The notes beneath the pieces are model-generated. The model was not told the DNA's origin and did not search any database. It saw only the letters and a program-made list of their open reading frames with translations. From the IMG/VR virus record IMGVR_UViG_3300035698_022190, positions 62,001 through 126,000 of that record: a DNA stretch of 64,000 nucleotides; one strand, 5' to 3'. Position 1 is the stretch's first letter; the number at the start of each line of letters is the position of its first letter. Both the position numbers and the translations under genes were made by a program. This document shows positions 2-36,591 of this stretch, one piece after another.

Positions 2-2398
2 ACCATGATTAAAAGTGTTGTTTTAAATCAGGGTGACGGAACTTTGTCTGCAACTGGGGGCACTGTTGGTTATATTACTTGTATAGTCCATAATAATGCT
101 TCAACAGCTATTACGCTAGAATTTCAATTTGATGATAGTATTGGAAACCCAGTTACTGTCGCAGAAACAGTTTCAACTGTTGTTGGGGGAACTGACGGAT
201 CTTCGGGATCTTCTGGCTCAAGTGGGTTGGCTGGAGCAGAGGGTGCAGAAGGAGCTGCAGGCGTGGACGCAAGGACAGTATCTTTAACAACAGACAAGCA
301 AGCTTTTGAATATTTAACAAGTAATGTACTAACTGGGACTACTACATGTACATTGACTGCAACTGCATTAAATACTACAGGAACAGTCTACTATCAATTT
401 TATAAAACACCAAAGGGCGGTGCCGCCAGCTCAGTTCAAAATTCAGCAAGCGCTACATATATATATACAGCTAATAGTTGGTACCCTGATATGCCCGAAA
501 CAATGGAAGTACAAATACGCGAGGGTGCGGTTACTGGACCAATATTAGCGCGTGATTCAATGACTATGATGGCCATTAAACCGGGTACAGATGGCGACGA
601 TGGTCTAGATGGTACAACTGTTTTAGTAACTAACGAAGCCCATTCTTTACCGACGACTAGCGCAGGCGCAGTAACTTATACAGGTTCCAGTACTTATATT
701 AAAGTTTGAATAGGAACTACTGCAATCCCAGTTGATCTTGTATCTAGCTATGCTTCCCCATCATTTAGAGTTACTGCAGCAGGTACAGGTATTACAGCGG
801 GAGGAATCTGACAGGATAGCACTTATGTTGTTGGTGTTGGTAATGCAAGTGCGGTAACCACAAACCCAGCCACAGTAAATTTAACTATAACAGTAAAAGA
901 TGCAGCAGGCACAGAAATTGTATATACCAAAATTCAGTCCCTTTCTCAATCTATTGAGGGTGATACGGGCGGAGCAGGAACTGCGGGCGATCCAGGTACT
1001 AGAGGGTCCTTACATTTTGAGGGCAACACTACAGAGATTTTGTGAACAAACGCCGCAGCAGAAGTAGTTATTGCTGATGCTATTGACGATGGTATTATTA
1101 CCGCAAAACAGAATCTAGATTCAGTTACTTTAAAAAATTCTGGTGTTGGGAGTTGAGACGGTTTTTGGGACACTACACAAAGTCCGGACGATTGAACTGT
1201 AGTTGAATACTATATGAATGGAAGTTTACTTGTGCAAGGAACTGTAACTGCCGCAGCACTAAACGCTGATAGTATTTTTTCAAAAGATTATACTCTAGGT
1301 ACTAATGGCTCTATTAAAACCAGCGGACGCGCTTATGGTGCAGCTTCAGCTGGTATATATTTAGGTAATGCTAGTAGTACGAGTAAATTAGATGTAACAA
1401 GTGCGAGTGGTACAAATTACATGCGCTGAGATGGGGCAAAATTTTCAGTTTATGGCGACGGTATGTGAATAATTGATTCATCGTCGGGACTAGTTGATGG
1501 TCCCATGTTAACTAGACATGTAGGAGATAGTCAAGGAGAGATCTTTACAAGCACTTCTACATCTTATGCTAAAAAAATGCAAGGTTCCTGTATATTAAAT
1601 TCTTTAGATACTAAAATTACTTGCGCTTATAGAGGATATAATTTAACTAATGATGCTGAAGGAAGGGTATGATTTAAAGTTTACTCTATTAACAACACCG
1701 TAACAGGATATAATACTGAGGTTGCAGCTGAAAGTGGTTGATTTGGAAACGGGGAAAGCACTACTAGCTGTTTTGTTGGAAATACACCAATTACTTTAGC
1801 TAGCGGAGAACAAGAATATATTAAATTTATAAAACCTGGAGATCTAGTACTTGGAAAGGATAATCAAATTAATGAAGTACAATCTATTCTAACCCCTACC
1901 CTTGGAACACAAACCTTATATAGAATAAATAAAAGTTTTCCTTTTGTAACAGGAGGACACCCATTTTGAACACAAAACGGCTGAAAAGTTATTGATCTAG
2001 ATGCCTATACAGAACTCCCTAATTTAGATGGACCTGTTACGGAATTTGAGCCTGGAGATTTTTTGCAAAGAGCGTCAGGAATCTTGGCACCGCTTAAGTC
2101 TATCGATTCTGTCCAAGAAGATCCAAACACACAATTATTTCATTTAGACGTTACAAATAATAATACTTATATTGCAAATAATTATGTTGTACATAATAAA
2201 GCAACACAATATCCACGTCACGTACCTGGTGTAATTTCATTATCTTTAAGCTCAAATCAAAAAGGCGCTCTTTGTTATTGAGAAGTATGATTAAAGCATG
2301 CTGGAGGAACTGCAGTTATAAGGGACATATCTATTGATGCAGGAAGACAAGGTTTAGACGAACTAGAAGACCACTACTATCCATTTAATGAGCTATAA
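2..2398 (+). CDS. Tail fibre/virion protein with C-terminal Hint domain; TGA read as Trp; probably 5'-truncated by window edge
   Basis: ORF-track pieces 5..709, 1214..1429 and 2063..2281 share one frame interrupted only by 13 TGAs and end at TAA 2396-2398. Gly/Thr/Ser-rich collagen-like stretches. Hint motifs CFVGNT...GHPF(W)TQNG(W)K...YIANNYVVHNK. Confidence 0.88.
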
Positions 2399-2460: not shown

Positions 2461-2679
2461 ATGCCCTACTTAGAAGAACTAAACTCCGAAATTGCAAATG
2501 CAGCCGCAATAAATCAAGAACGTCTTACAGTTATTGAGGATTTAAATAGTAAACTTGATGAAATACGACAGAGTCTCTCTATTACTCAAGAAGCTTATGT
2601 AATTGAGCAGCAACGTATGGAAGGCTTGACAGCCGCTCGTACTCTATATTTAAAAACCAAAGAAAAAGATGGAAATTAA
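2461..2679 (+). CDS. Small coiled-coil hypothetical protein
   Basis: ORF downstream of promoter; heptad pattern. Confidence 0.65.
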   Translation: MPYLEELNSEIANAAAINQERLTVIEDLNSKLDEIRQSLSITQEAYVIEQQRMEGLTAARTLYLKTKEKDGN

Positions 2680-2792
2680 AGATATAGGTCCGTCTTACCG
2701 AAAGGAAAATGAAACCTTTCAGGATTATAAAATTCGTCAAAGAAAAGAAAATAGATTTATTAAACAATATTTAAAAGGAAAGAATATCTGGA

Positions 2793-3554
2793 ATGCCGCG
2801 ATCGCCAATACATATAGAAAGCCTAAAAAACAGATTTAAGAATTTTTCATTTAACAACACTGTAATTTCGGTGTTGTTAGGTGTCATTTTTATTGGCGGT
2901 ATCTATGCTAATTATAAAATAGGGCAGTTACAAACTGATGTAGCACATTTTCAAAATGAAGCTGCGTCCTCTGATACAATACATCAATTAGACTCCACTA
3001 CAATTAGTAAACTGACTTTAGACGTTAGAAATATCACATCAGATAACGGCGAGCTACAAACTTTTATTGACCGTTTACATGGTGAAATAAGAACACAAGC
3101 TGACCTTATAGCTTCTTTAAATGACAGTGTAGCTAATGTTGAGACAGATGCTGACACAATAATTATAGATGGCGACGGACAAGACATCCGTAGATTTAAT
3201 ATAGCTAAGGGGGCTTTTAAGCTTAGAGGCTATTTTCAATTAGATAGTCCATACGAAATAACATTCGACGAAATGGCGGCCAAGATAGCTCTTGAGCTGA
3301 ACATCGTTCAGCTCCGTAATGGCCAGTGGGAAGCCTTCGTCGATACAAAAAACCCAAGTTTGACGGTCACCGATCTCGTAACAAAAGTTAATCCGTACAA
3401 ACCGGCCTGGTGGCAAAAGATTAATCTAAGCGGCGGGGTATATTTGCAAAGCAATCAGCTTGGCTTAATAGGTGGATTCGGGTACAACAAATTCTTAGGA
3501 TTAATTGGCTATGATCCTCGGGGATACATGCTTGGTGTTCAGTATGTCTTTTAA
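2793..3554 (+). CDS. Membrane-anchored coiled-coil protein, possible lysis accessory (spanin-like)
   Basis: N-terminal TM helix, coiled coil, C-terminal beta-strand pattern ending in F; near endolysin. Confidence 0.55.
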   Translation: MPRSPIHIESLKNRFKNFSFNNTVISVLLGVIFIGGIYANYKIGQLQTDVAHFQNEAASSDTIHQLDSTTISKLTLDVRNITSDNGELQTFIDRLHGEIRTQADLIASLNDSVANVETDADTIIIDGDGQDIRRFNIAKGAFKLRGYFQLDSPYEITFDEMAAKIALELNIVQLRNGQWEAFVDTKNPSLTVTDLVTKVNPYKPAWWQKINLSGGVYLQSNQLGLIGGFGYNKFLGLIGYDPRGYMLGVQYVF

Positions 3555-3562
3555 AAAAAACA

Positions 3563-3591
3563 TTGTTTTTTTAACAAATAACCATTATATT
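3563..3591 (+). promoter_or_regulatory. sigma70-type promoter TTGTTT-N17-TATATT upstream of small ORF and suppressor tRNA
   Basis: Matches recurring promoter pattern. Confidence 0.55.
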
Positions 3592-3596
3592 TAATT

Positions 3597-3782
3597 GTGA
3601 CTGATATTAGTATACATATAGACGAAGTCGCTGGTACAAAAAACTTTTCTGTCGAGATTAATGACCATAAACAACAAAAATGTTTTTTACTAGATGACTG
3701 TTATAACTCTTATGAAAGATGCTTAGAGGCAGCCATGGATTATATAAAGATAATGAAAATAAATATACAAACAAATGAATAA
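3597..3782 (+). CDS. Small hypothetical protein
   Basis: GTG-start ORF 5 nt after -10 box (leaderless). Confidence 0.5.
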   Translation: MTDISIHIDEVAGTKNFSVEINDHKQQKCFLLDDCYNSYERCLEAAMDYIKIMKINIQTNE

Positions 3783-3785
3783 TTT

Positions 3786-3883
3786 AGGCCCTAGGTGTCA
3801 GATGGGTGACAGTGAGTCTTCAAAACTTTTCCCCCTTGTGTCCAAAGCAAGGTGCGTGGGTTCAATTCCTACAGGGCCTGCCA
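3786..3883 (+). tRNA. Opal suppressor tRNA (anticodon UCA), probably Trp-accepting
   Basis: Acceptor AGGCCCT/AGGGCCT-G-CCA, loop CTTCAAA (TCA at 3820-3822), T-arm GTGGG-TTCAATT-CCTAC, long variable arm. Confidence 0.85.
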
Positions 3884-3900
3884 ATTAACCAAATAGAATC

Positions 3901-4503
3901 ATGTGGAATTTTATACAAAAGATAATAGATGCTTTACTTCGTAAACCCGTTCAGGTACTTGATCCTGTCGAGACAGCTTTTCAGATAATTAATATTACTG
4001 ATCAACTTCCTTGGCACCCAACACGTAAATGGGCAAAAAGGGGTTTATCACAGATACGAAAAGTGGTAGTGCACCAAGCCTATTGTTCTTATACGCGAAC
4101 AACACTACAAGGCATAAATAAATATCATATTACCCCTGGCCCAAATAATCATTTATCTCCAAACGGTGCTCCGCATATTGCGTATCATTATGGAATTATA
4201 GGTGACGGAACAGTATATCAAACAAATTATCTTAGTAATTCAACCTGGCATTCTGCCGGGCATAACACTGCCAGTATTGGCATATTAGTGTTAGGAGATT
4301 TCCATGGTCCCACGAGAGTAGGTGCAGATAAGCATCCTACCCGTAATCAACTACTTAGTCTAGAGAAACTATTAAATTATTTAGTAGAAGATGCTCAGAT
4401 AAGTATTACAAGCCACGACATTTTTGGTCACGCCAACTTTGGTAAAATAAACTGTCCTGGCACTGCAATAACACGCTTTCTCGATGAATACAGGAGAACC
4501 TAA
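3901..4503 (+). CDS. N-acetylmuramoyl-L-alanine amidase (Amidase_2/PGRP-like endolysin)
   Basis: VVVHQ, IAYHY, WHSAGHN..SIGI, GH....KINCPG motifs. Confidence 0.9.
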   Translation: MWNFIQKIIDALLRKPVQVLDPVETAFQIINITDQLPWHPTRKWAKRGLSQIRKVVVHQAYCSYTRTTLQGINKYHITPGPNNHLSPNGAPHIAYHYGIIGDGTVYQTNYLSNSTWHSAGHNTASIGILVLGDFHGPTRVGADKHPTRNQLLSLEKLLNYLVEDAQISITSHDIFGHANFGKINCPGTAITRFLDEYRRT

Positions 4504-5585
4504 TGAGAAAAATAACAAACATGAGTCTAGATGTTGTAGACCATATAATGAATGATAATCTCGTAAAGTTAGCGGAGCTTGTAGAGCCCTTATCGGATGA
4601 AGCTAAAATTGCTTATGTGCCGTCTTATGAAGAACAGCAAGCAGCAAATGAAAAAGATTTCGCTCTTGTTCTGTGAGACCCTAAAGACGGGACAATCCAT
4701 AAATATGCTCTTTACACATCCGAATTAGCGGAACTCAACCTAGCTTTCTTAGCAGATCAAAAAGACAATTTACCAGAAGAAGTAATTAAAATAGCTGCTG
4801 CAAACTTAACTGCCGCTGCAAAAAATTATGACCTTCCTGTACCTGAAGTCTTAAAAGATTATGCATCAGATAAATATATATACAATGTGCTAGATACACG
4901 TAAAATCAGCGAGGTTGGTTTTATAAATAAAACGGCTGCGGTCGTTGAACATAAAAGTTTTGCTTGGGAAGCGGAAAAGAAATACCCGCTTCATGACAGG
5001 CTAAATATAAAGAAAGCTGCTGCTTTCTTTGAAAAAAACCATTATAAAATGGCTATCGCCAAAAAATCAGAGTTTTGTCAAAATGTTATAGAAGCAGCAG
5101 AGGAACAAAACGTACCACTTGACAAGACAGCAATTCATAAATATGCTAGTTTTGACACTATAATTAATCCTGACTTTGTGGACCACATGAAGGTACGCTT
5201 AAGTTATTTAAAAGATAATAAATCAGAGCAGCCACACAAAGATTCTTACAATGAGCTTATTAAACGTGCAGACACAAAACATCAACAACCTGTTGAAGAG
5301 TTAATGCGCAACGTAGAGGAAGCTGACATTGCTTCTGGCTTATTTAATACCTATGGTAAAGGCGTCGCTGATCCATATGAAACTACACTCTCTGTAATTA
5401 AAGTTGCAGAAAGAACAGTGGACGGGATGACAGTATCTTTAGAGCAACTTCGTAATATTCCAGACGGAGAGCTTACATCTCTGATAGGTAATGGCGGAAT
5501 ATCCGAACTAAAGGCTGAAAATGGTCTTGATGTTTTTGAAGCTTTACCCAGACCGGTAAGACAGGATATTTCAAACTTATTCTAA
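4503..5585 (+). CDS. Hypothetical virion/head protein; one TGA (4674) read as Trp
   Basis: ATG at 4503 overlaps the amidase stop and is in frame with 4887..5585; only TGA interrupts; repeated K-x-A motifs. Confidence 0.75.
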
Positions 5586-5586
5586 A

Positions 5587-5937
5587 ATGCTAAGTAATAT
5601 ATTAAATATTTTACAAGAGTCCTATAAAATAGAAAGCTGGGTTTTATTGGGAATGCTTGCGGTATATTTAGTATTTTATGGATTTAGAACTTTTAAGCGT
5701 TGTGTAAATGATGCTTTTAATCCTTCAAATTCTGGGGAAAAACATTTTTTTGCTTTGGATCCTCGGGATGAAATTGAAAAAGGAAAAAAAATAGATAGAA
5801 CAGAAATTCCTATTGAAGAAACTAAAACCTTTACAAAAACAAAGGCAACTAAAAGTAATATGCCTTCACAAAAAATAGATAGTAAAGTTAATACAAAACA
5901 AGATTTAAATAAATTAAGAGAAATCAAGAATAAATAA
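5587..5937 (+). CDS. Membrane protein, hypothetical
   Basis: N-terminal TM helix; tight gene packing. Confidence 0.7.
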   Translation: MLSNILNILQESYKIESWVLLGMLAVYLVFYGFRTFKRCVNDAFNPSNSGEKHFFALDPRDEIEKGKKIDRTEIPIEETKTFTKTKATKSNMPSQKIDSKVNTKQDLNKLREIKNK

Positions 5938-5938
5938 T

Positions 5939-6925
5939 ATGAAAGGATTAGATGTAGGAACAGGAAATTTTGTCTTATCAGATGATAGCGGTGTATATTT
6001 ACAACGCAATGCTTTTTTAAGTTTAGATAAAGGAACTGCTTCTTTACGACAGTTAAAAATACTCGGGGTGCCTTATATTGAGGTAGATGGTCGGATACAT
6101 ATTGTAGGACAGAAAGCTTATGAATATGCACAAGTCTTTAATACCACAGATTTAAGACGCCCTATGTCCAACGGATTGCTGAATCCATCAGAACAAGACG
6201 CCCTACCCGTTTTAAAAGTAATTATAGAAGAGCTCGTAAAACAATCTACAGCACCTGTTGACAATGAATTAATTGTGTATAGTGTGCCGGGACATCCTTT
6301 AGACCAAGACCGTGAAGTAGATTATCACGAGGATGTATTAGGACAAATAATAGAAAGTTTAGGTTTTAAAGCAAAATCATTAAATGAGGGAGTAGCCTTA
6401 GGGACTGCCGGATTAATTGATGACCAGCTTACTGGTATTGCAATTTCTATGGGGGCAGGAATGTGTAATATAGCTATTATGTATGCTGGTATGTCAGCAC
6501 TTCAATTTAGTGTTGCTAAAGGCGGGGACTGGATAGACCAGCAAATAAGTACTGAAACAGGTGTATCCAAGGCACAAGCACAGTTTGCAAAAGAGTCAGG
6601 AGATTACACAATTGATCCTGGATCAACAGAGCCCAGAAATAGGGCCCAACAAGCAGTTAAAACTTACTACGAATCTTTAATTAGATACCTTTTAGTAAAT
6701 ATAGAAAAACAATTTACAAGCAACAGCATGCCAACCTTTCCAAATCCAGTGCCTATAGTTGTGGGCGGGGGAACAGCCATGGTTAATGGGTTTTTAGAAG
6801 TATTTAAGGAGCAGTTTACACATAAGGAATTTCCTTTGAATATTAGTGAGATAGTTTTGGTTAAGGAACCTTTAACAGCTGTGGCGCGGGGATGTTATCT
6901 AGACGCCCAATTAGAGGAAGGATAA
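5939..6925 (+). CDS. Actin-fold ATPase (MreB/ParM/MamK-like)
   Basis: GLDVGT phosphate-1, ISMGAG phosphate-2, VVGGGTAM adenosine motif, EPLTAVARG. Confidence 0.85.
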   Translation: MKGLDVGTGNFVLSDDSGVYLQRNAFLSLDKGTASLRQLKILGVPYIEVDGRIHIVGQKAYEYAQVFNTTDLRRPMSNGLLNPSEQDALPVLKVIIEELVKQSTAPVDNELIVYSVPGHPLDQDREVDYHEDVLGQIIESLGFKAKSLNEGVALGTAGLIDDQLTGIAISMGAGMCNIAIMYAGMSALQFSVAKGGDWIDQQISTETGVSKAQAQFAKESGDYTIDPGSTEPRNRAQQAVKTYYESLIRYLLVNIEKQFTSNSMPTFPNPVPIVVGGGTAMVNGFLEVFKEQFTHKEFPLNISEIVLVKEPLTAVARGCYLDAQLEEG

Positions 6926-7537
6926 ATGAGCAAAGCCATATATATAATGGAAAAAAATAGCAAGCTTGGTATTTCAATAGGAGCACTTAAAGACTACCCT
7001 AAGGTGTGGCAAAAGCCAGACCCAAACCAAACAACTTTTGATAAATTAAAGCAAACCAATCAAATGCATTCTCCTAAAAAACGTTTAACAGATTTACAAT
7101 TGACACGTCTAGCGCGTAAACAAGATGTTAAACAATATAGACAAGCTAAACTGTTTAAGAACATGGGCACTAAAGCCGGCAATGTGGTAGAAAAAAGTAT
7201 GAAGCTTATTAAATTTGCTGAAAAAAAGAAACCTTATATGTCCTCAGCAGCTCAAGGACTTACAGCGGGAGGGTCCGCAGCCATGGTGGCTACAACAACA
7301 ATGTTTCCTATGGACACTTTTACTACTGGACGACAATCAAAAATGGTTGCCGATCTGGCTGCAGAAGGGTATACATTATCAGCTAAAACTTTCATTAATA
7401 ATCCAAAACTAATACCCAGACTATATCGGGGCCTTCCTCATAAGTTAGGAAAAACTGTTCCAGGAATGGCACTAACTTTTGCAACTTATGAAGGTGTAAA
7501 AAAATTGTTGGACAAAAAATTTACAAGCGAAAAATAA
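6926..7537 (+). CDS. Protein with a single mitochondrial-carrier (SLC25)-like repeat
   Basis: AGGSAAMVATTTMFPMDTF...LYRGL...KTVPGMALTFATYEGVKKLL resembles the Mito_carr repeat signature. Confidence 0.6.
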   Translation: MSKAIYIMEKNSKLGISIGALKDYPKVWQKPDPNQTTFDKLKQTNQMHSPKKRLTDLQLTRLARKQDVKQYRQAKLFKNMGTKAGNVVEKSMKLIKFAEKKKPYMSSAAQGLTAGGSAAMVATTTMFPMDTFTTGRQSKMVADLAAEGYTLSAKTFINNPKLIPRLYRGLPHKLGKTVPGMALTFATYEGVKKLLDKKFTSEK

Positions 7538-7538
7538 A

Positions 7539-8021
7539 ATGGATTTTCAAGATATAATAAAAAGTAAAGAAATTTACGAACCAGAAACACTAGAGATGTT
7601 GTTTCCACAATTGACCTCTCTAGACAGACAAAAGATACAAGTCTTATGGCTACTGCAGAACACCCGTTCGGCCTATGAAGATTTAGATGTCTTTGAAAAT
7701 GTCGTTCTAATTTTAAATGATATTGAGCCTGATCCTATAAAAATGGAAGGATCTACGCCTGAATTTATTTGGAAAGCGTTGGACATGGTTGCAAAAATAC
7801 ATAAAGATGTGGAGCTATCAGATGAAGTGCAAGCATATATTAAGTATATTTTTGATGATCATGGATACAACTTTTATCCGCCTACTTCAGGTTTAGACCA
7901 AACCCCATTGTATGATAGAGTCAAACGGACAGCAGATACCGGCCCATTTCCTTTAAAAGAAGATGCCTTTGGAATACAAGTTATACGATATTTACGTATA
8001 ATGAAATACATCAATAAATAA
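7539..8021 (+). CDS. Hypothetical protein
   Basis: Intact ORF in tight operon. Confidence 0.75.
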   Translation: MDFQDIIKSKEIYEPETLEMLFPQLTSLDRQKIQVLWLLQNTRSAYEDLDVFENVVLILNDIEPDPIKMEGSTPEFIWKALDMVAKIHKDVELSDEVQAYIKYIFDDHGYNFYPPTSGLDQTPLYDRVKRTADTGPFPLKEDAFGIQVIRYLRIMKYINK

Positions 8022-8035
8022 ACGGAGAGTTATAC

Positions 8036-9910
8036 ATGCCTGTCAGAAACGTGACTGAGGCAGATCTAGAACAGATTACGAGTAAAAAATACCCTAATCC
8101 GTTTTTTGATTTAGCCAACAATTACATTCCTAAAAATATTAAAACCCTTTTTAAGTTTTGTAGAGCCTATTTTTATACAAATGGTTTTCTACGAAACGTT
8201 GTTACTAAACTTACTGAGTATCCTATAACAGACATTTTATATGGCACCATTGATCCTGCCGCAAAAGAAAAATATGATGTAGCTTTATATGAAAAATTAC
8301 ACATTAGAAAATTTCTAATTGAAATTGGGCTTGATTATTTTACTTTCGGCAATGCTTTTGTATCCTTTAATATGCGATTTAAAAGATTTTTAAGATGTAA
8401 AAATTGTAACCATACCTTAACTATTGATGAAGCTTCTTTTAAAATGAGAAATTTTGAGCTTGAGTTAAAATCCTGTCCTAAGTGTCAAATGAAAAATGCA
8501 CCCACGGAAATAGAAGACCAAGAGATTAAATCAATAGACTCTTTTAATTTAGTAAAGTGGGATCCAGTAAATTTAGATATTGATTATAATCCATTAACAG
8601 GATCATCTACATATTATTATAACATCCCAGGTAAAATAAGACAAAAGATTATGGCTGGGGATAAAAAAACTATAAAGGAAGTACCAAAAGTTTTTCTAGA
8701 AGCTATAAAAAAGAAGAAAAAAATTGAACTAAATGCAGACAATATTTTCCATTTTAAACGTCCCACTCTTGCCGAAGATGATATGGGATGGGGTAAACCA
8801 ATTATATTGCCAGCATTAAAAGAATTATATTATTTAGCAACATTACGAAGAGGTAATGAAGCGATAGCTAATGAACACATTGTGCCTAAAAAAGCGGTGT
8901 TTCCAGCTAATACAACTACTATGGATCCGTTCACTCAAATGAATTTAGGTAAATGGTCCGGACAAATTCACAACCAAATAAAGAAGTGGAAGGCGGACCC
9001 TAATCATATTGGGGTGTTCCCCATACCTATTGGTTATCAAGAATTAGGTGGAAACGCTCGAACTTTACTATTAACACCGGAAATGAAGTTTATTGAAGAA
9101 TCTGTTATTAATAGTTTAGGAGTACCTTTAGAGTTTATTAAGGGCGGAACATCCTGGACAGGTTCTAGTATTTCATTAAGAATTGTTGAAAATCATTTCT
9201 TAGTTTATCGTGGGTTATTGGCCGACTTTTTAAACTTCTTTGTAATAAAAAAATTATCAGCCCTTTTGTCTTATCCACCCGTTAAGGTTCACTTTAAAGA
9301 TTTAAGAATGACAGATGATACAGAATCAAAACAATTGGCTATAAATTTAAATGCCGGCAATAAAATTTCTGATCATACTTTATTATCTCAATTAGGATAT
9401 GATCCGGAACATGAGGAATTTGCTAAAAAACAAAGTTTTGCTGATGCTCTAGCAGCTGAGATTGAAACACAAGAAACCCAAGCTGAGGCACAAGGTAAGG
9501 CACAAGTTATATTAGCTAGATATAATACTAGGGCCACAAAAGCTGCAGAAGACGAAGTATTTAGATTAAGAGCTGAGTTATTCCAAGATGAATTAAACAG
9601 AGAATTGGGGGCAATCCCTGAGGATCCAATGAAGTTAATTGAACGGTACGCAGTAATGATGTTAAGTATGCCGGAAGCTCAAGCTAAAAAGGAACTACAG
9701 CAATTAGCAATTAAATTGCCTACAACTTATACTCTTGTAAATGAGAGAATCCAAATGATGATGATGGCTAGTATGGAGGGCGAAGAAGAAATGGAAACAG
9801 TAAAATCTTCTGAAGCTCCAAACCAAAAAAAAGTCGGAACCCGTGAAGGGGATAAAGTAAAAATAAAAGGTGAGCGCCACAAAGGCTCCACTAAAGGACA
9901 ACCAAATTAG
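8036..9910 (+). CDS. Putative portal protein with Zn-ribbon insertion
   Basis: Portal-like motifs (DYFTFGNAF, IFHFKRP..GWGKPIILPAL, INSLGVPLEFI..G), CxxC..CxxC, size and context. Confidence 0.7.
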   Translation: MPVRNVTEADLEQITSKKYPNPFFDLANNYIPKNIKTLFKFCRAYFYTNGFLRNVVTKLTEYPITDILYGTIDPAAKEKYDVALYEKLHIRKFLIEIGLDYFTFGNAFVSFNMRFKRFLRCKNCNHTLTIDEASFKMRNFELELKSCPKCQMKNAPTEIEDQEIKSIDSFNLVKWDPVNLDIDYNPLTGSSTYYYNIPGKIRQKIMAGDKKTIKEVPKVFLEAIKKKKKIELNADNIFHFKRPTLAEDDMGWGKPIILPALKELYYLATLRRGNEAIANEHIVPKKAVFPANTTTMDPFTQMNLGKWSGQIHNQIKKWKADPNHIGVFPIPIGYQELGGNARTLLLTPEMKFIEESVINSLGVPLEFIKGGTSWTGSSISLRIVENHFLVYRGLLADFLNFFVIKKLSALLSYPPVKVHFKDLRMTDDTESKQLAINLNAGNKISDHTLLSQLGYDPEHEEFAKKQSFADALAAEIETQETQAEAQGKAQVILARYNTRATKAAEDEVFRLRAELFQDELNRELGAIPEDPMKLIERYAVMMLSMPEAQAKKELQQLAIKLPTTYTLVNERIQMMMMASMEGEEEMETVKSSEAPNQKKVGTREGDKVKIKGERHKGSTKGQPN

Positions 9911-13820: not shown

Positions 13821-14035
13821 TCAAATTTGTTTATGTTCTTTTCTTCTTGTAGGGACAACTTATAATATTCTGTTATTAGTGGTCTTAGTTCTCTGATACC
13901 TTTTCTAGCGGGTCTTCCATATTTTTTTATACCAAATAAGAAAAATCGCTTATGTGGATGACTAAATTCCTCTAGCTTTGCCTTAATATCTTTTACTATA
14001 TCATTAGTTGTTCTTACGCTTGTACTTTGTTCCAT
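13817..14035 (-). CDS. Small basic protein, histone H1-like (Hc1-type) candidate
   Basis: G.K..GRPARK..REL..LI.EY.KLS pattern resembles Bacteroidota Hc1-like proteins. Confidence 0.45.
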   Translation of the reverse strand: MEQSTSVRTTNDIVKDIKAKLEEFSHPHKRFFLFGIKKYGRPARKGIRELRPLITEYYKLSLQEEKNINKFE

Positions 14036-14751
14036 GTTTTTCCTCGTGTTTTATTTGAGCGCCAACATTTATTACAATGTGTGCAGCTCATATTATGTGC
14101 GAGAAGCCCACTGTCACAGGGACACTGTGCTTTGATGGTCTGCGCTTTTTCACGTTCTTCTTTTGTTCGTCCTATAGTGAAAAAGACATCGAGTTTATAC
14201 CCTTTCTTTAGCCAATGTTTGCAATCATCCGAAATACCAGTAAATGCATATGCTGTGTCCGGACGTGAACGATAGGTTTGAGTTGCTTTATAATTGGCTA
14301 AAATGTTTTGATTATCAAAACTAAAAAGGATATTCGTTAAGTTTTTTAACTTTAATACTTTATCTAATTCAGGGCGCATTTTTGCGCTTGTTAGATTTTT
14401 TGAAATAATATAAAATCTAAAATTTAATGCCTTTAAAAATTCATAATGTTCAGGAACATAATCTCCTGATCCATACATACGAACAGGTAACTTGTCTAAG
14501 CGAGTATACTGTTTTGCTTTGCTGTTTCTTAGTTTTTCGTATTCTTTGTTTAACTGTTTTGCAAATGTTTCCGGTTTTGTTGTTGCCCAGTTGCTATTAC
14601 GTTTCATTTTATCCCAGTAAGCCGGATATATTCTTTCTAGATTTCCAACATAGCAGTAATCGCAAATTTGATTGCAAGTTTTAGCTCTGTCGAAATCGAT
14701 TGAAAGTACCGTCTTACTATTATTAGTAAAAGCTTGCACCTGCATCAACAT
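14014..14751 (-). CDS. Radical-SAM-like Fe-S protein (phage Gp88-like)
   Basis: CNQICDYCY (Cx3Cx2C), RMYGSGD, C-terminal CPC...CTHCNKCW. Confidence 0.6.
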   Translation of the reverse strand: MLMQVQAFTNNSKTVLSIDFDRAKTCNQICDYCYVGNLERIYPAYWDKMKRNSNWATTKPETFAKQLNKEYEKLRNSKAKQYTRLDKLPVRMYGSGDYVPEHYEFLKALNFRFYIISKNLTSAKMRPELDKVLKLKNLTNILFSFDNQNILANYKATQTYRSRPDTAYAFTGISDDCKHWLKKGYKLDVFFTIGRTKEEREKAQTIKAQCPCDSGLLAHNMSCTHCNKCWRSNKTRGKTWNKVQA

Positions 14752-14763
14752 TTTTCGGTTAAC

Positions 14764-14988
14764 TTAGTTTAATGTATCTGTACTTTTTTTTGCTTTAGTT
14801 TCGTCGTACTTCTTAGAAACTCCCTTCATGTAGTCTTCATAGCTAACGGGAATTATGTTCGATAAGTGAGAATCACGAATTTTTTTGCTTATATTGAGGG
14901 CATCAATGATGTCATCAGTACGAACAAATAAAACTCGCGACTCACTTAAGTTTTTCCCTGTTTCCAGACTAATCTTAAAGTGTTGCAT
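14764..14988 (-). CDS. Small hypothetical protein
   Basis: ORF with GGAAAG upstream, in RT operon. Confidence 0.6.
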   Translation of the reverse strand: MQHFKISLETGKNLSESRVLFVRTDDIIDALNISKKIRDSHLSNIIPVSYEDYMKGVSKKYDETKAKKSTDTLN

Positions 14989-15193
14989 TGTATATTTCTT
15001 TCCGTATTTTGTGTGTTTTACTTCACGTTTTCAGTCTTACTGTTTTGCTCTATTCAATGTTGTGTTCGGCTAAGGCTGCAATCAATCTGCCTGCTGCGGC
15101 TATTATAATAAGCCACGTTTGCCGAGAAATTCTCTGATAGAACATAACTGTGTTCCCTGGTTACGTTTGGTAAAGTATGTATATATTATTCCA

Positions 15194-15787
15194 TTATCGT
15201 TTCTTTTTAGGAACTTCTATTGTACAATACATAAATAAAAATCTTCTACATTCTCCGAGAAGTTTTTGTATTTGGATTCTTATTTTTTTAGTATCTTTAG
15301 TCCCTAAGGAACTAGAGATTGTGGTTTTTTTATCCGTCCATTTATAAGTGAAGCCTCTTTGTTTTGAAACACGTCTCGCTGCCGGGACTTTATAAAAGGT
15401 TTGACTTAATCCTAAACGTCTGCGACCTTTTGTATTTTCAATACATAGACGCATATATTCATTTTGTGAGTATCTAGTTATTTCAGTAAATTCGTGTTTT
15501 ACAATCCCTTTAAACTCTATAAATTGGGTTGCGGGTGTTTTGAACTGACTCCACCCAAAAGGTAAATATATTTCTATTAAAGCTGGAAATTCTAGTTTAT
15601 TATAAGCTTCAAATAAAGTTAGGAAGTCAGTTTCCCATAAGCTTTCAGTAGCTGCTTTCCCCGATGGGGATTCAGGCTGTTTATCCACTCGATCTGGCCC
15701 CGTATTTTCTGCCGATCCTTGAGCTGTAACTTTACGGAATCTTTTGATAGATTGAATAGCTTCGCCCTCAGATTTCTCCACTTCCAT
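15194..15787 (-). CDS. Basic hypothetical protein overlapping RT 3' end (candidate RT partner); start uncertain
   Basis: Open frame directly downstream of and overlapping RT. Confidence 0.6.
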   Translation of the reverse strand: MEVEKSEGEAIQSIKRFRKVTAQGSAENTGPDRVDKQPESPSGKAATESLWETDFLTLFEAYNKLEFPALIEIYLPFGWSQFKTPATQFIEFKGIVKHEFTEITRYSQNEYMRLCIENTKGRRRLGLSQTFYKVPAARRVSKQRGFTYKWTDKKTTISSSLGTKDTKKIRIQIQKLLGECRRFLFMYCTIEVPKKKR

Positions 15788-16521
15788 TTGGGTACTCCTA
15801 ATTTATCATTGACTACTACACCTGTAACGCTCATTCTTCTGTGAGGTCGCATAATGCGTGTTTTTTTATAATTTAATTTAAAGCCCTGTTCTTTTATTAT
15901 ACCAATAATTTCAGCAATATCATCAACCGTAAATTCATATTTTGGCGCTGGGTGAGAGAAAGCCAAATCATCCGCATAACGTGTATATGTTAGCCCACGT
16001 TTTTTGCTGAAAGTTTGCAAAGCTATGTCCATTTTCATACTAATTAGATTAGCCATTGCTGGACTAGTCGGAGCACCCTGAGGTAAACGATACTTATAAG
16101 TGACCAGCTCTGCTAATAAAACAGCAGCGTTTGTTGAAAATTGAAATTCTTTATCCCTGGCTTCTAATTTTTTTCCTAAATAAGTTATTTCTCTTACAAC
16201 ATGGTTGAAGCTTACAGTATGAAAAAAATTACTTAGGTCCATACATAAAATAACTTTGTTCCCTAAATGTCTTTTTGCACCAGTAGATACACCATAATTT
16301 TTTCTAAAGCCTACTGCCGCACCATGTGGTCGAAATCGATATAAAAATTTATATAAAATAGACACTTGTAAATCTTTTAGTTCTTGTTGTGGCGCGTCAA
16401 TCCAACGTTTCTTTCCATTAGATTTTGAGATTGGATAACTTAAATAATGGTTCTTTTTATCCATTATTACTCTTGTAAGCTCATCCGCGCTCTTACCTAA
16501 CATGTCATATATTGTTGCCAT
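15619..16521 (-). CDS. Retron-type reverse transcriptase
   Basis: K.NGKKRWIDAP, GAKRH (region X), DLSNFF, LPQGAPTSP, YTRYADD, VTG (region Y); start probably ATG 16521. Confidence 0.95.
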   Translation of the reverse strand: MATIYDMLGKSADELTRVIMDKKNHYLSYPISKSNGKKRWIDAPQQELKDLQVSILYKFLYRFRPHGAAVGFRKNYGVSTGAKRHLGNKVILCMDLSNFFHTVSFNHVVREITYLGKKLEARDKEFQFSTNAAVLLAELVTYKYRLPQGAPTSPAMANLISMKMDIALQTFSKKRGLTYTRYADDLAFSHPAPKYEFTVDDIAEIIGIIKEQGFKLNYKKTRIMRPHRRMSVTGVVVNDKLGVPKWKWRNLRAKLFNLSKDSVKLQLKDRQKIRGQIEWINSLNPHRGKQLLKAYGKLTS

Positions 16522-16566
16522 TTTCGTAGTTATCTCTTTTATAGGGCGCAGCAAAGCTACGCCCTT

Positions 16567-19530: not shown

Positions 19531-20661
19531 CTATTTAAAAGTTAATCCTACTCGTTTATAAATGTCAACTAAGTAATCTTCAATATCGTTTTGAAGTTTA
19601 ATAACATATTTTACATCTTTGCCACGACTCTTTAAACTAGTTTCATATGTATGAAGTTCTTCGCTAGCTTCTTTTAGCTTATTAGCCTTTTCAACTGCTT
19701 CTGTTGTTAAAGCAACAGTCTTTGGATCTAGATCCATAAAATCTTTATAGATATCAGTTGCGTCATCAAATAATTCATCCATCTTGTTTTTATCAGGATT
19801 AATTTTTGTGAGGATATGGCTATAAATAGTTTTCCTATGATCAGGGTCCGACCACAGACAGTGCTGTAAGATGTCAAAATCACTTTCTCCTACCGCATCT
19901 CTGCCATTGAAAAAAGCTTCAGCTTTTAAAATATTTCGAACGGTCATGTATGTTCTGTCCGACACATAAGTGCCGTCGTCATTAATCATTGTTCGCAGCT
20001 CAGCTAATAAATTTTTATCAGCCTCAGCAATTTTTATTTTTTTTACTGCCTTCTGTGCTTTACGCATTTCCGCTAAGGTTAACACCGCATCTTCTTGAAA
20101 TTCTGGAATTTCTAACATTTTTATAAAGTTAGCAGATTCTGCAATAGGTTGTGTATAAAATTTTATTACAAACCTATCAAGCATTGCTTCGAGATCGTCA
20201 CCTTCTTCGGGAAGCTCATTAGAAGCCCCTATCATTGCTAATAATGGAACCTTAATTGGCAGCCCATTATTGTAAAATATACGTTCGTTCATCATTGTTA
20301 ATAAGAAATTAGCAACCCCTGTGTTTCCTTTATATACTTCATCTACAAAGGCAAAGTCTGCTTGCGGCATCATATTATCTGTGTTTCTTATATACTGGTC
20401 GTTTTCTAAACCTTTTAATGAAAAAGGCCCTGCTAACTCCTCTGGGGTAGAGAAAGAATTTAGCATCCAACTAAAATATTTTGCACCAGTAATTAATTGA
20501 CTATAATAATCTACTAACATTGATTTGGCAATACCGGGACGACCTAGCAATAAAACGTTTGTTCCTGCGAGTATCCCTAAAGTTATACCATGTACTTCTT
20601 GGTCTCGCTCTATTAAATACTTATTTAGGGTGTTTTCCACTTGTTGGAATTTTTTATACAT
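19531..20661 (-). CDS. MoxR/RavA-family AAA+ ATPase
   Basis: GRPGIAKS Walker A, FVDEVYK Walker B, GASNELP, LDRF; GAGGT RBS before ATG 20661. Confidence 0.9.
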   Translation of the reverse strand: MYKKFQQVENTLNKYLIERDQEVHGITLGILAGTNVLLLGRPGIAKSMLVDYYSQLITGAKYFSWMLNSFSTPEELAGPFSLKGLENDQYIRNTDNMMPQADFAFVDEVYKGNTGVANFLLTMMNERIFYNNGLPIKVPLLAMIGASNELPEEGDDLEAMLDRFVIKFYTQPIAESANFIKMLEIPEFQEDAVLTLAEMRKAQKAVKKIKIAEADKNLLAELRTMINDDGTYVSDRTYMTVRNILKAEAFFNGRDAVGESDFDILQHCLWSDPDHRKTIYSHILTKINPDKNKMDELFDDATDIYKDFMDLDPKTVALTTEAVEKANKLKEASEELHTYETSLKSRGKDVKYVIKLQNDIEDYLVDIYKRVGLTFK

Positions 20662-21053
20662 TAATACCTCGTTTGTAGGATTGGAAAGTGTATATTGACT
20701 TGTCTTCGTTTTTGACAGAAAATCCAATATCTGTGTTTTAAATCTCTGCTTGCTGTATGCTCTCTATCTTTGGTATGTGTCATCAAGCCCTCAATTGTAT
20801 CAAACTCATGTGGGTAGATGTTACACACATAGCTGGGTACAGTTGCGTGAATATCAGCAAAACCTAAATTAATGTGTGTAACTAAACCCAAAGTATTCTC
20901 ATGTATTGATAAAGTACAAGCTGAGATATGATCAGACGTGGAAGAATATGTAAGTATGCTATCTTCTTCAGACACTATCTTATGTTTTCGTATCCACGGT
21001 GTCTGTTTTATCTCCTTTATCAGTTTCTTTTTCGTTGTCATTTTTCTGTTCAT
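20661..21053 (-). CDS. Hypothetical protein
   Basis: ORF whose stop overlaps the MoxR start. Confidence 0.5.
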   Translation of the reverse strand: MNRKMTTKKKLIKEIKQTPWIRKHKIVSEEDSILTYSSTSDHISACTLSIHENTLGLVTHINLGFADIHATVPSYVCNIYPHEFDTIEGLMTHTKDREHTASRDLKHRYWIFCQKRRQVNIHFPILQTRY

Positions 21054-33487: not shown

Positions 33488-33541
33488 CTATTTGTTTCCT
33501 TGTTTTATATTGTTTAATACATATAACTCTTTTTATATGTG

Positions 33542-33943: not shown

Positions 33944-33949
33944 ATATTT

Positions 33950-34210: not shown

Positions 34211-34253
34211 AACTAGGTCTCCGTTTACAAGATTCTTATACCATAATAGATTA

Positions 34254-36588: not shown

Positions 36589-36591
36589 CTG

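What the first reader, a model, noticed from the sequence alone, without database searches (positions are those of the whole stretch)
6926..7537. Mitochondrial-carrier-like repeat in a phage protein
Seen: AGGSAAMVATTTMFPMDTF..RQ...LYRGL...KTVPGMALTFATYEGVKKLL follows the SLC25 repeat pattern (helix-PxD...Q...YRG...P...F..YE..K). Known: SLC25 carriers are eukaryotic three-repeat proteins, and a one-repeat ancestor is only hypothesised. Inference: a single-repeat, possibly oligomeric membrane protein in the virion gene block.
Basis: inference. Interest (0 to 1): 0.7.

Follow-up and report, generated by a model that had tools for sequence, protein, structure and literature searches.

The report
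Single-repeat mitochondrial-carrier protein in phage
A 210-kb marine/salt-lake jumbo bacteriophage encodes a conserved small protein that is one free-standing repeat of the "mitochondrial carrier" (SLC25) fold, which normally has three fused repeats and is thought to be eukaryote-only. It is predicted to form a three-copy ring, so the idea that carriers arose by tripling a two-helix unit could be tested at the bench.

Summary
ORF 6926..7537 (+, 203 aa) matches Pfam Mito_carr over one full repeat (40.2 bits against a cut-off of 22.3; E 2.9e-10). A profile of its relatives hits solved carriers (UCP2 E 1.8e-18, bovine AAC1 1.5e-15).

It belongs to a small family of 110-200-aa single-repeat proteins. 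These occur only on marine or saline phage contigs, in a fixed late module: amidase, DUF6582-type protein, single-pass membrane protein, Volactin-type actin, this gene, a 160-aa protein, then the portal. The gene is usually translationally coupled to the actin gene and is under strong purifying selection (dN/dS 0.09).

P-x-D, the Q brace, Y-[KR]-G and the contact-point lysine are conserved. Both salt-bridge gate motifs are not.

A homotrimer is predicted with ipSAE 0.64 against 0.00 for the best control, with carrier-like helix 1 to helix 2 packing. The monomer fold searches were uninformative.

My reading is a homo-oligomeric, carrier-like membrane protein that works in the actin/portal module, not a classical antiporter. 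The function and the evolutionary origin (capture from a eukaryote or an older lineage) remain open. I found no report of such a protein in the literature I could search.

The parts
6926..7537 (+). Gene for the single-repeat mitochondrial-carrier-like protein (203 aa, stop TAA, no internal TGA)
   Evidence: ORF; Pfam Mito_carr 40.2 bits, one repeat; family and synteny; stop codon and absence of in-frame TGA
6926..7177 (+). N-terminal extension (residues 1-84), basic and helical, specific to this phage. Relatives of 111-128 aa lack it, and one relative (L030) has a C-terminal extension instead.
   Evidence: No homologue for residues 1-85. Closest relative P0001 is 119 aa and starts right after the upstream gene. 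The region is coding: mostly synonymous changes and M80I in an independent sample. Conserved RBS before the ATG at 6926. L030 extension.
7178..7243 (+). Family-conserved basic amphipathic lead-in helix and the 'KPYMS' segment (residues 85-106)
   Evidence: Alignments A1 and A3; residues 102-107 lie in the predicted trimer interface
7244..7336 (+). Helix 1 with a GxxxG/A small-residue motif, followed by the carrier signature P128-x-D130-T131...Q137. The salt-bridge Lys of the canonical motif is Thr133.
   Evidence: Invariant G115, P128, D130, T131 and Q137; alignment to AAC1 and UCP repeats
7337..7441 (+). Basic connecting loop (the equivalent of the matrix loop and short helix), ending in the conserved L-Y-[KR]-G
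   Evidence: Invariant Y167 and G169. Mean loop net charge is +8 in the family against +4 in eukaryotic repeats.
7442..7534 (+). Helix 2 (K173, K176, P179, T184, then Y188-E-x-x-K192) and the basic tail with the family motif L-D-K-x-F
   Evidence: Conservation. K176 aligns with the Arg of 'RYFP' in AAC1 repeat 1. Packs on helix 1 of the next copy in the predicted trimer.
5939..6925 (+). Volactin-family actin homologue (328 aa). Its stop codon abuts the start of the carrier-like gene.
   Evidence: Pfam PF25216 E 2e-70, full length; weak MamK/MreB/FtsA matches; orthologues 57-60% identical directly upstream of the carrier-like gene in other loci
5587..5937 (+). Small single-pass membrane protein (116 aa) with a conserved basic C-terminal tail
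   Evidence: Strong TM helix (Kyte-Doolittle 1.7-2.2) in the window and in the L004, L007 and L019 homologues
4503..5585 (+). DUF6582-type acidic protein gene (360 codons) interrupted by one in-frame TGA at 4674-4676
   Evidence: It aligns through the TGA to the 356-aa homologue of L007 (44% identity over 363 aa; X opposite W). DUF6582 hits.
3901..4503 (+). Amidase_2 peptidoglycan hydrolase, first gene of the tightly packed + strand block
   Evidence: Pfam PF01510 E 3.7e-16; the same position relative to the module in L023
7539..8021 (+). Conserved acidic 160-aa protein of unknown function between the carrier-like gene and the portal
   Evidence: 45-53% identical homologues in L003, L007, L019 and L021; no informative family or fold match
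8036..9910 (+). Portal protein (624 aa), last gene of the block
   Evidence: phrog_16240 portal; Atlas neighbours are all portal families; 32-34% identity to Vibrio phage D69 and the annotated Salmonella phage Arash portal, and to the Bacillus phage G portal
3786..3883 (+). tRNA with anticodon UCA (reads UGA), probably used to read the in-frame TGA codons of this phage
   Evidence: ARAGORN; Rfam tRNA-Sec 32.5 bits, below the cut-off of 47; TGA statistics

Best explanation
SHOWN. The gene encodes a genuine, functional, free-standing single repeat of the mitochondrial-carrier (SLC25/MCF) fold. It has two weakly hydrophobic helices joined by a basic loop. It belongs to a small family confined to a clade of marine and saline jumbo myophages.

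INFERRED. Three copies assemble head-to-tail, helix 1 of one copy against helix 2 of the next, into a six-helix carrier-like bundle in the host inner membrane. Both termini lie on the same side of the membrane.

The family keeps the structural hallmarks of the fold: the P-x-D kink, the Q brace, Y-[KR]-G, GxxxG-type packing residues and a Lys at the substrate-contact position. It has lost the charged partners of both the matrix and the cytoplasmic salt-bridge gates. It therefore probably does not work as a classical alternating-access antiporter. A fixed or loosely gated membrane pore or platform is more likely.

The gene is a late gene, translationally coupled in most genomes to a phage actin (Volactin family). 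It sits with a single-pass membrane protein in a module that ends at the portal gene. My best guess is that it is the membrane-embedded partner of this actin/portal-proximal machinery, and that its variable basic N- or C-terminal extensions make the cytoplasmic contacts.

I am about 0.9 confident of the identity, about 0.5 of the trimeric membrane assembly, and about 0.3 of the link to the actin module. The figure given for this explanation is for the combined statement.
For: Identity:
- Pfam Mito_carr match above cut-off over a whole repeat.
- 267 carrier hits in the exhaustive search.
- The family profile hits UCP2, AAC1, UCP1, GTP/GDP and oxoglutarate carriers.

A functional gene family:
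- Eleven or more distinct short members, 30-66% identical, with invariant G115, P128, D130, T131, Q137, Y167 and G169.
- dN/dS 0.09 between two close members.
- Mostly synonymous variation in a second sample.

Phage context and linkage:
- The same module is present in the window, L004, L006, L007-9, L019, L023 and L031. Volactin C-termini lie upstream in L003, L005, L028 and L030.
- A conserved RBS precedes the gene, and its start abuts or overlaps the stop of the upstream gene by 0-17 nt (0-8 nt where that gene is the actin).

Membrane likeness: helix hydropathy (0.77 and 0.56) lies within or near the range of real carrier repeats (0.98-1.18 and 0.31-0.68).

Trimer: ipSAE 0.64/0.63/0.64 against 0.00 for the best of 3 controls, partner pLDDT at least 74, at least 85% contact agreement between runs. 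The mark was reached by 20 of 30 true pairs and 1 of 23 single chains in the tool's calibration, which holds only roughly here because my own alignment and three copies were used. The interface is helix 1 (102-133) against helix 2 (172-203) of the neighbouring copy, in a ring.

Termini on one side: the extension is N-terminal in the window and C-terminal in L030.

Gate loss: Thr133 aligns with the salt-bridge Lys of P-x-[DE]-x-x-[KR]. The cytoplasmic Y-[DE]-x-x-K motif is Y-G/A/T-x-x-K in most members.
Against: - The monomer model is only a helical hairpin (pLDDT 71). It has no significant structural neighbour: Foldseek PDB E>=3, AFDB SLC25A39/40 at E 0.4, VIA Z<=7.5.
- The trimer score may reflect the model's memory of the SLC25 fold.
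- Conservation is not enriched at the predicted interface once the comparison is limited to the helices (p=0.3).
- The proteins are strongly basic on both sides of the hairpin (net +8 to +24). The positive-inside rule therefore gives no consistent topology, and moving either side across a bacterial membrane looks costly.
- Actin adjacency is not universal. In L020 the gene directly follows the DUF6582-type gene, and in L021/L022 a different gene lies upstream.
- Two huge phages with Volactin homologues have no carrier-like gene.
- No direct test of binding to the actin could be run.
- No expression data: only DNA runs hold the stretch.
Confidence: 0.45

Rival explanations
1. A minimal homotrimeric solute carrier or channel that acts on its own, for example moving anions, nucleotides or ions across the host inner membrane, or dissipating membrane potential. 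Its position next to the actin and portal genes would be incidental.
For: It is homologous to carriers. A ring-shaped trimer is predicted. The invariant Lys176 aligns with the Arg of 'RYFP' in AAC1 repeat 1, which by my own knowledge of AAC is substrate-contact Arg79. Three copies would give a positively charged cavity. The GxxxG-type packing residues and the Q brace are kept. The phage carries nucleotide and NAD metabolism genes (RNR, NAPRTase).
Against: Neither salt-bridge gate network is conserved, so alternating access as known in carriers is unlikely. A strictly three-fold symmetric site does not suit asymmetric substrates. Tight translational coupling and conserved synteny with the actin module argue for a joint function.
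Confidence: 0.2
2. A virion-associated or head-assembly factor. It would either anchor portal or prohead initiation at the membrane, as membrane chaperones do for T4, or be packaged and delivered into the envelope at infection. Delivery from outside would let the membrane potential pull the basic loop inward, as in carrier import into mitochondria.
For: It is conserved next to the portal. In L021 the gene keeps the 160-aa and portal neighbours without an upstream actin. It lies in a late, tightly packed block with no convincing internal terminator. The very basic composition could suit DNA or acidic lipids.
Against: No similarity to any known structural, scaffold or ejection protein. In L023 the portal is not nearby, yet the actin pairing persists. 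The cultured relatives with the most similar portals lack the gene altogether.
Confidence: 0.12
3. A soluble, non-membrane adaptor for the phage actin, analogous to ParR or AlpA, which are encoded just downstream of ParM and AlpC. On this view the carrier repeat has been re-used as a basic helical hairpin that binds filaments and perhaps DNA.
For: The gene lies immediately downstream of an actin-like ATPase and is translationally coupled to it. The protein is small and very basic. The monomer model is a plain helical hairpin.
Against: No centromere-like repeat arrays nearby. The helices are rich in small residues (Gly/Ala/Ser/Thr). The conserved P-x-D kink and carrier packing motifs are typical of membrane-embedded carrier helices. 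Their hydropathy matches real carrier helices. The predicted assembly is a closed ring.
Confidence: 0.1
4. A lysis protein of the holin or pinholin type: a small two-helix late protein that depolarises the membrane to time lysis.
For: An Amidase_2 hydrolase and a TM plus coiled-coil protein lie just upstream in the window, and an amidase lies upstream in L023. The protein is small, has two helices and a charged tail. Loss of the gates could give an open pore.
Against: It is separated from the amidase by three genes. No amidase is nearby in L004, L007 or L019. The helices are far less hydrophobic than holin TM domains, and the 26-67-residue basic loop (about 42 on average) is atypical. No holin family match.
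Confidence: 0.08
5. A decaying fragment of a eukaryotic carrier gene picked up by chance, with no function.
For: It has only one repeat and a restricted distribution. Other short Mito_carr hits in the databases are exon fragments of eukaryotic genes.
Against: dN/dS is 0.09. Variation is synonymous-biased in a second sample. Core residues are invariant across members only 30% identical. Synteny, RBS and coupling are conserved.
Confidence: 0.02

Closest known systems
SLC25 / mitochondrial carrier family (ADP/ATP carrier, uncoupling proteins; Pfam PF00153)
   Same: The sequence is clearly homologous over one full ~95-residue repeat. It keeps the P-x-D kink, the Q brace, Y-[KR]-G, small-residue packing motifs, the Pro of helix 2 and a basic residue at the contact-point position. 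Helix hydropathy is comparable. The predicted inter-copy packing (helix 1 on helix 2 of the neighbour) mirrors inter-repeat packing.
   Different: It has one repeat per chain instead of three fused repeats. It is encoded by a bacteriophage, not a eukaryotic nucleus. [quoted passage not shown] The loop is twice as basic. It carries family-specific lead-in and tail motifs and variable terminal extensions.
Full-length carriers acquired outside eukaryotes: Mimivirus VMC1 (dATP/dTTP carrier) and Legionella LncP (named from my own knowledge, not tested here)
   Same: They are precedents for carrier genes in a virus and in a bacterium, explained by transfer from eukaryotic hosts.
   Different: Those are complete three-repeat carriers that act in a eukaryotic host's mitochondria. 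Here there is a single repeat in a tailed phage whose tmRNA points to a bacterial host, with no eukaryotic target evident.
SemiSWEET versus SWEET sugar transporters (analogy, from my own knowledge)
   Same: A prokaryote-side protein carrying one structural repeat that must oligomerise to rebuild the fold its eukaryotic relatives have in one chain.
   Different: Different fold and stoichiometry (dimer of 3-TM units against a putative trimer of 2-TM units). SemiSWEET transport is demonstrated. Here nothing has been measured.
CysZ / YihY, proposed remote bacterial homologues of AAC (bioRxiv 10.64898/2026.03.31.715626)
   Same: Both bear on the origin of SLC25 outside eukaryotes and on the 'arch-repeat' that was triplicated.
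   Different: That proposal rests on structural similarity with a circular permutation and on one motif. The phage family is detectable by plain sequence HMMs at E 1e-10 to 1e-18 and is a free-standing repeat.
Actin-like ATPase plus downstream adaptor pairs (ParM/ParR; prophage AlpC/AlpA), from my own knowledge
   Same: A small basic protein is encoded directly downstream of an actin-fold ATPase and co-expressed with it.
   Different: No centromere-like repeats and no DNA-binding fold detected. The partner here is homologous to a membrane carrier repeat.

Membership tests
SLC25 / mitochondrial carrier family (PF00153) | Significant match to the Mito_carr repeat profile above the curated cut-off | tested here: met
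   40.2 bits against 22.3, E 2.9e-10, profile positions 4-95 of 96; 41.6 bits in the six-frame genome search
SLC25 / mitochondrial carrier family (PF00153) | Homology to carriers of known structure | tested here: met
   Family profile against PDB: UCP2 2lck 1.8e-18, AAC1 1okc 1.5e-15, UCP1, 6gci, 9wv2, 4c9g/4c9j and oxoglutarate carrier chains. All three repeats of UCP2, AAC1 and UCP1 align.
SLC25 / mitochondrial carrier family (PF00153) | Tripartite chain: three tandem ~100-residue repeats giving six TM helices in one polypeptide | tested here: not met
   There is one repeat only (residues 107-198). The rest of the protein has no carrier similarity, and there is no second carrier gene in the genome.
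SLC25 / mitochondrial carrier family (PF00153) | Signature P-x-[DE]-x-x-[KR]-x-[KR] on the odd helix, forming the matrix salt-bridge network | tested here: not met
   P128 and D130 are invariant, but the first [KR] is Thr133 (Thr/Ser/Asn/Ala in the family). The second [KR] is Gly in the window (Arg one residue later) and Arg in several members.
SLC25 / mitochondrial carrier family (PF00153) | Gln brace following the signature (…x-Q) | tested here: met
   Q137 is invariant in all members and aligns with the Q of AAC1/UCP repeats
SLC25 / mitochondrial carrier family (PF00153) | [DE]-G-x(4,5)-[WYF]-[KR]-G motif of the matrix helix and linker | tested here: inconclusive
   The L-Y-[KR]-G part is conserved (Y167 and G169 invariant). 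An E-G pair exists in the window (147-148), but it is 18 residues upstream of Y167 and is not conserved in the family.
SLC25 / mitochondrial carrier family (PF00153) | Cytoplasmic network motif [FY]-[DE]-x-x-[KR] on the even helix | tested here: inconclusive
   Present in the window (Y188-E-G-V-K192) and in P0076. Most members have Y-G/A/T-x-x-K, so the acidic partner is not a family feature.
SLC25 / mitochondrial carrier family (PF00153) | Six-helix barrel with three-fold (pseudo)symmetry | tested here: inconclusive
   A homotrimer with a cyclic helix 1/helix 2 interface is predicted: ipSAE 0.64 against a best control of 0.00, pLDDT at least 74, at least 85% contact agreement. The score may come from fold memory. 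No coordinates were available for comparison with AAC. The monomer fold searches were not significant.
SLC25 / mitochondrial carrier family (PF00153) | Integral inner-membrane location and solute exchange activity | not testable with these tools
   Only indirect evidence: helix hydropathy is similar to that of real repeats
Phage holins (class II, two TM domains) | Small late protein with strongly hydrophobic TM domains and a short turn, encoded next to the endolysin | tested here: not met
   Maximum 19-residue hydropathy is 0.81. The loop is 26-67 residues (about 42 on average) with a net charge near +8. Three genes separate it from the amidase, and no amidase is nearby in several relatives. 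No holin family hit.
ParR/AlpA-type adaptors of actin-like segregation systems | Gene downstream of the actin-like ATPase, plus a centromere-like repeat array and a DNA-binding fold | tested here: inconclusive
   The position and coupling are met. No repeat arrays were found in 2500-8100. No DNA-binding domain was detected.

The most novel reading that the evidence does not exclude
The phage family may be a natural, working 'one-third carrier': a two-helix SLC25 unit that builds a functional six-helix transporter or channel as a homotrimer. That is the architecture postulated for the pre-triplication ancestor of all mitochondrial carriers. It could be a survivor of that lineage, or a repeat recaptured from a eukaryote and selected to work alone. 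Either way it would play the role for SLC25 that SemiSWEETs play for SWEETs, and it would be the first such protein outside eukaryotes. The stronger version, that it descends from the pre-eukaryotic ancestor and not from a captured eukaryotic repeat, is not excluded by the unresolved tree. I put that version at only about 0.07.
Probability: 0.25. Interest if true: 0.92.

Novelty: new variant of a known kind. Interest (0 to 1): 0.8.

Why it matters
Mitochondrial carriers are regarded as a eukaryotic invention with no prokaryotic relatives. Their origin by triplication of a two-helix unit has remained a hypothesis, because no free-standing unit was known.

A conserved single-repeat family under purifying selection in bacteriophages gives an experimentally tractable object. 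Can one repeat trimerise? What does a perfectly symmetric carrier without salt-bridge gates do? Was the repeat captured, or does it come from an older lineage?

The family also adds a new item to the list of eukaryote-like features of jumbo phages. It is linked to a phage-encoded actin of the Volactin family, so it may reveal a membrane-attached cytoskeletal or assembly system in a large, uncultured marine phage clade.

Tried and rejected
- **Monomer structure route.** The AF2 model (pLDDT 71) was searched with Foldseek against PDB and AFDB Swiss-Prot and with VIA-align wide. It gave only generic helical hairpins, so no structural confirmation came from the monomer.
- **Donor repeat.** The family HMM seemed to prefer repeat 3. 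Repeat-specific HMMs do not discriminate (59/54/58 bits), and repeat 3 is generically the most consensus-like. The quick ML tree shows one phage group (aLRT 76-89), but its placement is unresolved. No donor can be named.
- **Interface conservation.** There is no enrichment at the predicted trimer interface within the helices.
- **Search for relatives in cultured phages and IMG/VR.** None found. The Fusobacterium phage FNU1 'mitochondrial carrier' mention is a chance BLAST hit at E 8.5.
- **Other short Mito_carr proteins.** P0190 and P0230 turned out to be exon fragments in eukaryotic contigs. P0190 had been included as one row of the alignment used for folding, which is a minor blemish.
- **Neighbour function.** The 160-aa protein has no informative family or fold match. 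PHROGs and NCBIfam give nothing for the target.
- **Centromere-like repeats** near the actin gene: none.
- **Promoter and terminator scan:** not informative.
- **Host identification** was not achieved beyond 'bacterial', from the tmRNA.
- **RNA evidence:** only DNA runs hold the locus.
Full report
**1. The observation.**

Pfam's Mito_carr model matches residues 107-198 over profile positions 4-95 of 96. The score is 40.2 bits against a curated cut-off of 22.3 (E 2.9e-10). A six-frame search of the whole 210,208-bp virus record that contains the window finds this match and no other above cut-off.

An exhaustive phmmer search of 1.84 billion cluster representatives returns 267 hits at E<=1e-3. 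All cover the C-terminal half only. The top hits are short proteins, followed by ordinary ~300-aa three-repeat carriers at E 1e-9 to 1e-4.

A profile of the short relatives hits solved carriers. UCP2 scores E 1.8e-18, bovine AAC1 1.5e-15, and UCP1, fungal and yeast AACs, a GTP/GDP carrier and the oxoglutarate carrier also match. All three repeats of UCP2, AAC1 and UCP1 align. The resemblance is homology, not chance.

**2. What kind of genome this is.**

The record is a tailed jumbo phage. It has the following features:
- A tail sheath, ribonucleotide reductase and primase.
- A multisubunit RNA polymerase, a MoxR ATPase, a reverse transcriptase, a SNF2 helicase and NAPRTase.
- 25 tRNAs and a tmRNA confirmed by Rfam at 108.5 bits. 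The tmRNA points to a bacterial host.
- A portal protein, the 624-aa product two genes downstream of the target. It is 32-34% identical to Vibrio phage D69 and to the annotated portal of Salmonella phage Arash, and more distantly related to the Bacillus phage G portal.

The stretch is held by salt-lake and marine metagenomes.

**3. A conserved family in a conserved module.**

The short relatives are 111-151 aa (P0001, P0002, P0004, P0007, P0075, P0076, P0082, P0118, P0141, P0151, P0152 and near copies). They are complete genes on phage-like contigs of up to 106 kb from Tara Oceans and other marine or saline samples.

The recurring gene order is:
1. (Amidase_2, in some loci)
2. A DUF6582-type acidic protein of ~356 aa
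3. A small single-pass membrane protein
4. A Volactin-family actin of ~340 aa
5. The carrier-like gene
6. A conserved 160-aa protein
7. The portal

The carrier-like gene starts 0-17 nt from the stop of the upstream gene (0-8 nt where that gene is the actin). A GGAGG-type ribosome-binding site sits inside the 3' end of the actin gene, which indicates translational coupling.

The actin orthologues are 57-60% identical, while the carrier-like proteins are only 30-40% identical.

The pairing is frequent but not absolute. In L020 the gene follows the DUF6582-type gene directly. In L021/L022 a different gene lies upstream, while the 160-aa and portal genes follow. In L023 the portal is not nearby.

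Two huge uncultured phages have Volactin homologues but no carrier-like gene. The cultured phages with the closest portals have neither.

GenBank phages and IMG/VR contain no further member. Other short Mito_carr proteins in the databases proved to be exon fragments on eukaryotic contigs.

**4. The gene is functional, and its odd N-terminus is real.**

Two close members differ with dN/dS 0.09, and the helices are unchanged between them.

The window protein has an 84-residue basic, helical N-terminal extension that the others lack. Its closest relative is 119 aa and starts directly after the upstream gene.

The extension is translated. The conserved RBS precedes the ATG at 6926. A contig from an independent marine sample spans 6781-7257 with no indel. 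In that contig 10 of 13 changes in codons 58-87 are synonymous, and Met80 is replaced by Ile, so Met80 cannot be the start.

In the related contig L030 the protein instead carries a ~65-residue basic C-terminal extension. Extensions at either end fit a hairpin whose two termini lie on the same side.

**5. Anatomy compared with carriers.**

These positions are invariant or nearly so across the family:
- G115 in a GxxxG/A stretch of helix 1
- P128-x-D130-T131
- Q137
- L166-Y167-x-G169
- K173 and K176
- P179 and T184
- The Tyr and Lys of Y-x-x-x-K
- A family-specific L-D-K-x-F tail

Against AAC1 and UCP sequences, P128, D130 and Q137 align with the P-x-[DE]…Q signature. K176 aligns with the Arg of 'RYFP' in AAC1 repeat 1, which by my own knowledge of AAC is a substrate contact point. 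Thr133 occupies the place of the Lys that makes the matrix salt bridge. The acidic residue of the cytoplasmic [FY]-[DE]-x-x-[KR] motif is present in the window protein but is Gly, Ala or Thr in most members.

So the fold-determining residues are kept, and the charged gate networks that drive alternating access are not.

Mean hydropathy of the two helices is 0.77 and 0.56. Real carrier repeats score 0.98-1.18 and 0.31-0.68, so the values are comparable. The connecting loop is about twice as basic (+8 against +4).

The proteins are basic on both sides of the hairpin, so the positive-inside rule gives no clear topology. This is a genuine difficulty for simple insertion into a bacterial membrane.

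**6. Oligomer.**

The AlphaFold monomer (pLDDT 71) is a helical hairpin preceded by a long helix. Structural searches with it are not significant.

Three copies of residues 80-203 are predicted to bind with ipSAE 0.64, 0.63 and 0.64. The best of three controls scores 0.00. Partner pLDDT is at least 74, and at least 85% of contacts are shared between runs. In the tool's calibration this mark was reached by 20 of 30 true pairs and 1 of 23 single chains. That calibration applies only roughly here, because my own alignment and three copies were used.

The interface is helix 1 (102-133) of one copy against helix 2 (172-203) of the next, going round a ring. This is how repeats pack in carriers.

The score may partly be memory of the SLC25 fold. 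Conservation is not specifically enriched at the interface.

**7. Origin.**

The phage proteins form one group in a quick ML tree with 135 eukaryotic repeats (one change, aLRT 76-89), but their position is unresolved.

An apparent preference for repeat 3 disappears with repeat-specific models (59, 54 and 58 bits) and is partly a generic property of repeat 3.

The narrow distribution, and a similarity to eukaryotic repeats as high as those repeats show to each other, make a single capture from a eukaryote the more economical reading. That is an inference, and the data do not exclude an older lineage.

**8. How it most likely works.**

Shown:
- It is a real single carrier repeat.
- It is under purifying selection.
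- It is late-module encoded and usually coupled to a phage actin.

Inferred:
- It forms a homotrimeric six-helix bundle in the host inner membrane.
- It lacks classical gating.
- It acts as the membrane-embedded partner of the actin/portal-proximal module, with basic terminal extensions as contact sites.

The rivals are an autonomous symmetric carrier or channel, a portal-assembly or virion-delivered membrane protein, a soluble actin adaptor, and a holin-like protein. The report sections give the evidence for each and the result that would refute it. A dead gene fragment is contradicted by the selection data.

**9. Novelty.**

The accessible literature states that SLC25 has no known prokaryotic homologues and that triplication of a two-helix unit is a hypothesis. 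A 2026 preprint proposes CysZ/YihY as remote structural relatives.

No paper combines phage with mitochondrial carrier or Mito_carr in a relevant way. Neither a marine jumbo-phage survey nor a 2026 jumbo-phage review mentions carriers or phage actins of this kind. The Volactin papers do not mention viruses.

I therefore rate this as a new variant of a known kind. The domain is known. The architecture and the host realm are new.

**10. Side finding that affects gene calling.**

The DUF6582-type gene (4503..5585) has one in-frame TGA, which aligns with Trp in homologues. The carrier-like gene of L030 has an in-frame TGA where its closest homologue has Trp.

In-frame TGA junctions between long ORFs are strongly enriched on the + strand. 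Treating TGA as sense raises ORF coverage from 0.83 to 0.90. A tRNA with anticodon UCA lies at 3786-3883.

The target gene itself has no internal TGA and stops at TAA, so its boundaries are unaffected.

Noticed in passing
window 4674-4676 (in gene 4503..5585); tRNA at 3786-3883; L030:701-703; genome-wide: UGA appears to be read through in this phage clade. One in-frame TGA in the DUF6582-type gene aligns with Trp (Phe in some homologues). One in the carrier-like gene of L030 aligns with Trp in its closest homologue. There are 47 in-frame TGA junctions between ORFs of at least 55 codons on the + strand, against 6 on the - strand. ORF coverage rises from 0.83 to 0.90 if TGA is treated as sense. 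The phage carries a 98-nt tRNA with anticodon UCA. It scores 32.5 bits against Rfam tRNA-Sec (below cut-off), and its acceptor-stem ends resemble those of the phage tRNA-Trp.
   Followed up: partly
window 5939-6925: A full-length Volactin-family actin homologue (Pfam E 2e-70) is encoded by a jumbo phage. The family was described in haloarchaea. Homologues 31-37% identical occur in two huge uncultured phages (LR745208, 485 kb; LR756511, 595 kb). The papers I could search do not report phage Volactins.
   Followed up: partly
window 22018-27465: Multisubunit RNA polymerase in which beta and the N-terminal part of beta' are fused in one 1238-aa ORF. An in-frame TGA (25732-25734) follows, and then an ORF with the rest of beta'. 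Read through, this would be one ~1815-residue polypeptide. The related Salmonella phage Arash has a single 1525-aa RNAP gene next to its portal.
   Followed up: partly
window 33539-45601 (- strand): A dense RNA gene island with a tmRNA (Rfam 108.5 bits; unusual tag ending ...FAYAG) and about 25 tRNA genes.
   Followed up: partly
window 2793-3554 and 3901-4503: A possible lysis cluster just upstream of the module. One protein has an N-terminal TM helix, a coiled coil and a beta-rich C-terminus ending in ...QYVF (spanin- or outer-membrane-like). It is followed by an Amidase_2 hydrolase. An amidase occupies the same relative position in L023.
   Followed up: partly
window 14014-16554 (- strand), with counterparts in L004, L007, L019, L023: A conserved block with a reverse transcriptase (RVT_1, E 6.6e-21) and a GP88-family protein. 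In relatives it also holds a Chlamydia Hc1-like histone-type protein and glycosyltransferases. It may be a diversity-generating retroelement. Not examined.
   Followed up: no
L030:446-997 and 1034-1282: The L030 relative of the target has a ~65-residue basic C-terminal extension instead of the window's N-terminal one. An extra 82-aa gene with a glycine-zipper-like TM segment lies before the 160-aa gene. A similar glycine-rich segment ends the ORF upstream of the carrier-like gene in L021/L022.
   Followed up: no
G000:C1:1-60 and 210149-210208 (outside the window): Both ends of the 210-kb record consist of the same short GGAACATC/GGGACATC-type repeat, which looks like collagen-like Gly-X-Y coding. 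The assembly therefore probably breaks inside a repetitive gene, and the genome may be circularly permuted. Window ORF 5..709 also has a weak collagen-repeat match.
   Followed up: no
window 19531-20727, 48336-49538, 55864-57090: Accessory genes: a MoxR-type AAA ATPase (with a VWA protein nearby in relatives), an SPFH/Band-7 membrane-scaffold protein, and a nicotinate phosphoribosyltransferase for NAD salvage.
   Followed up: no
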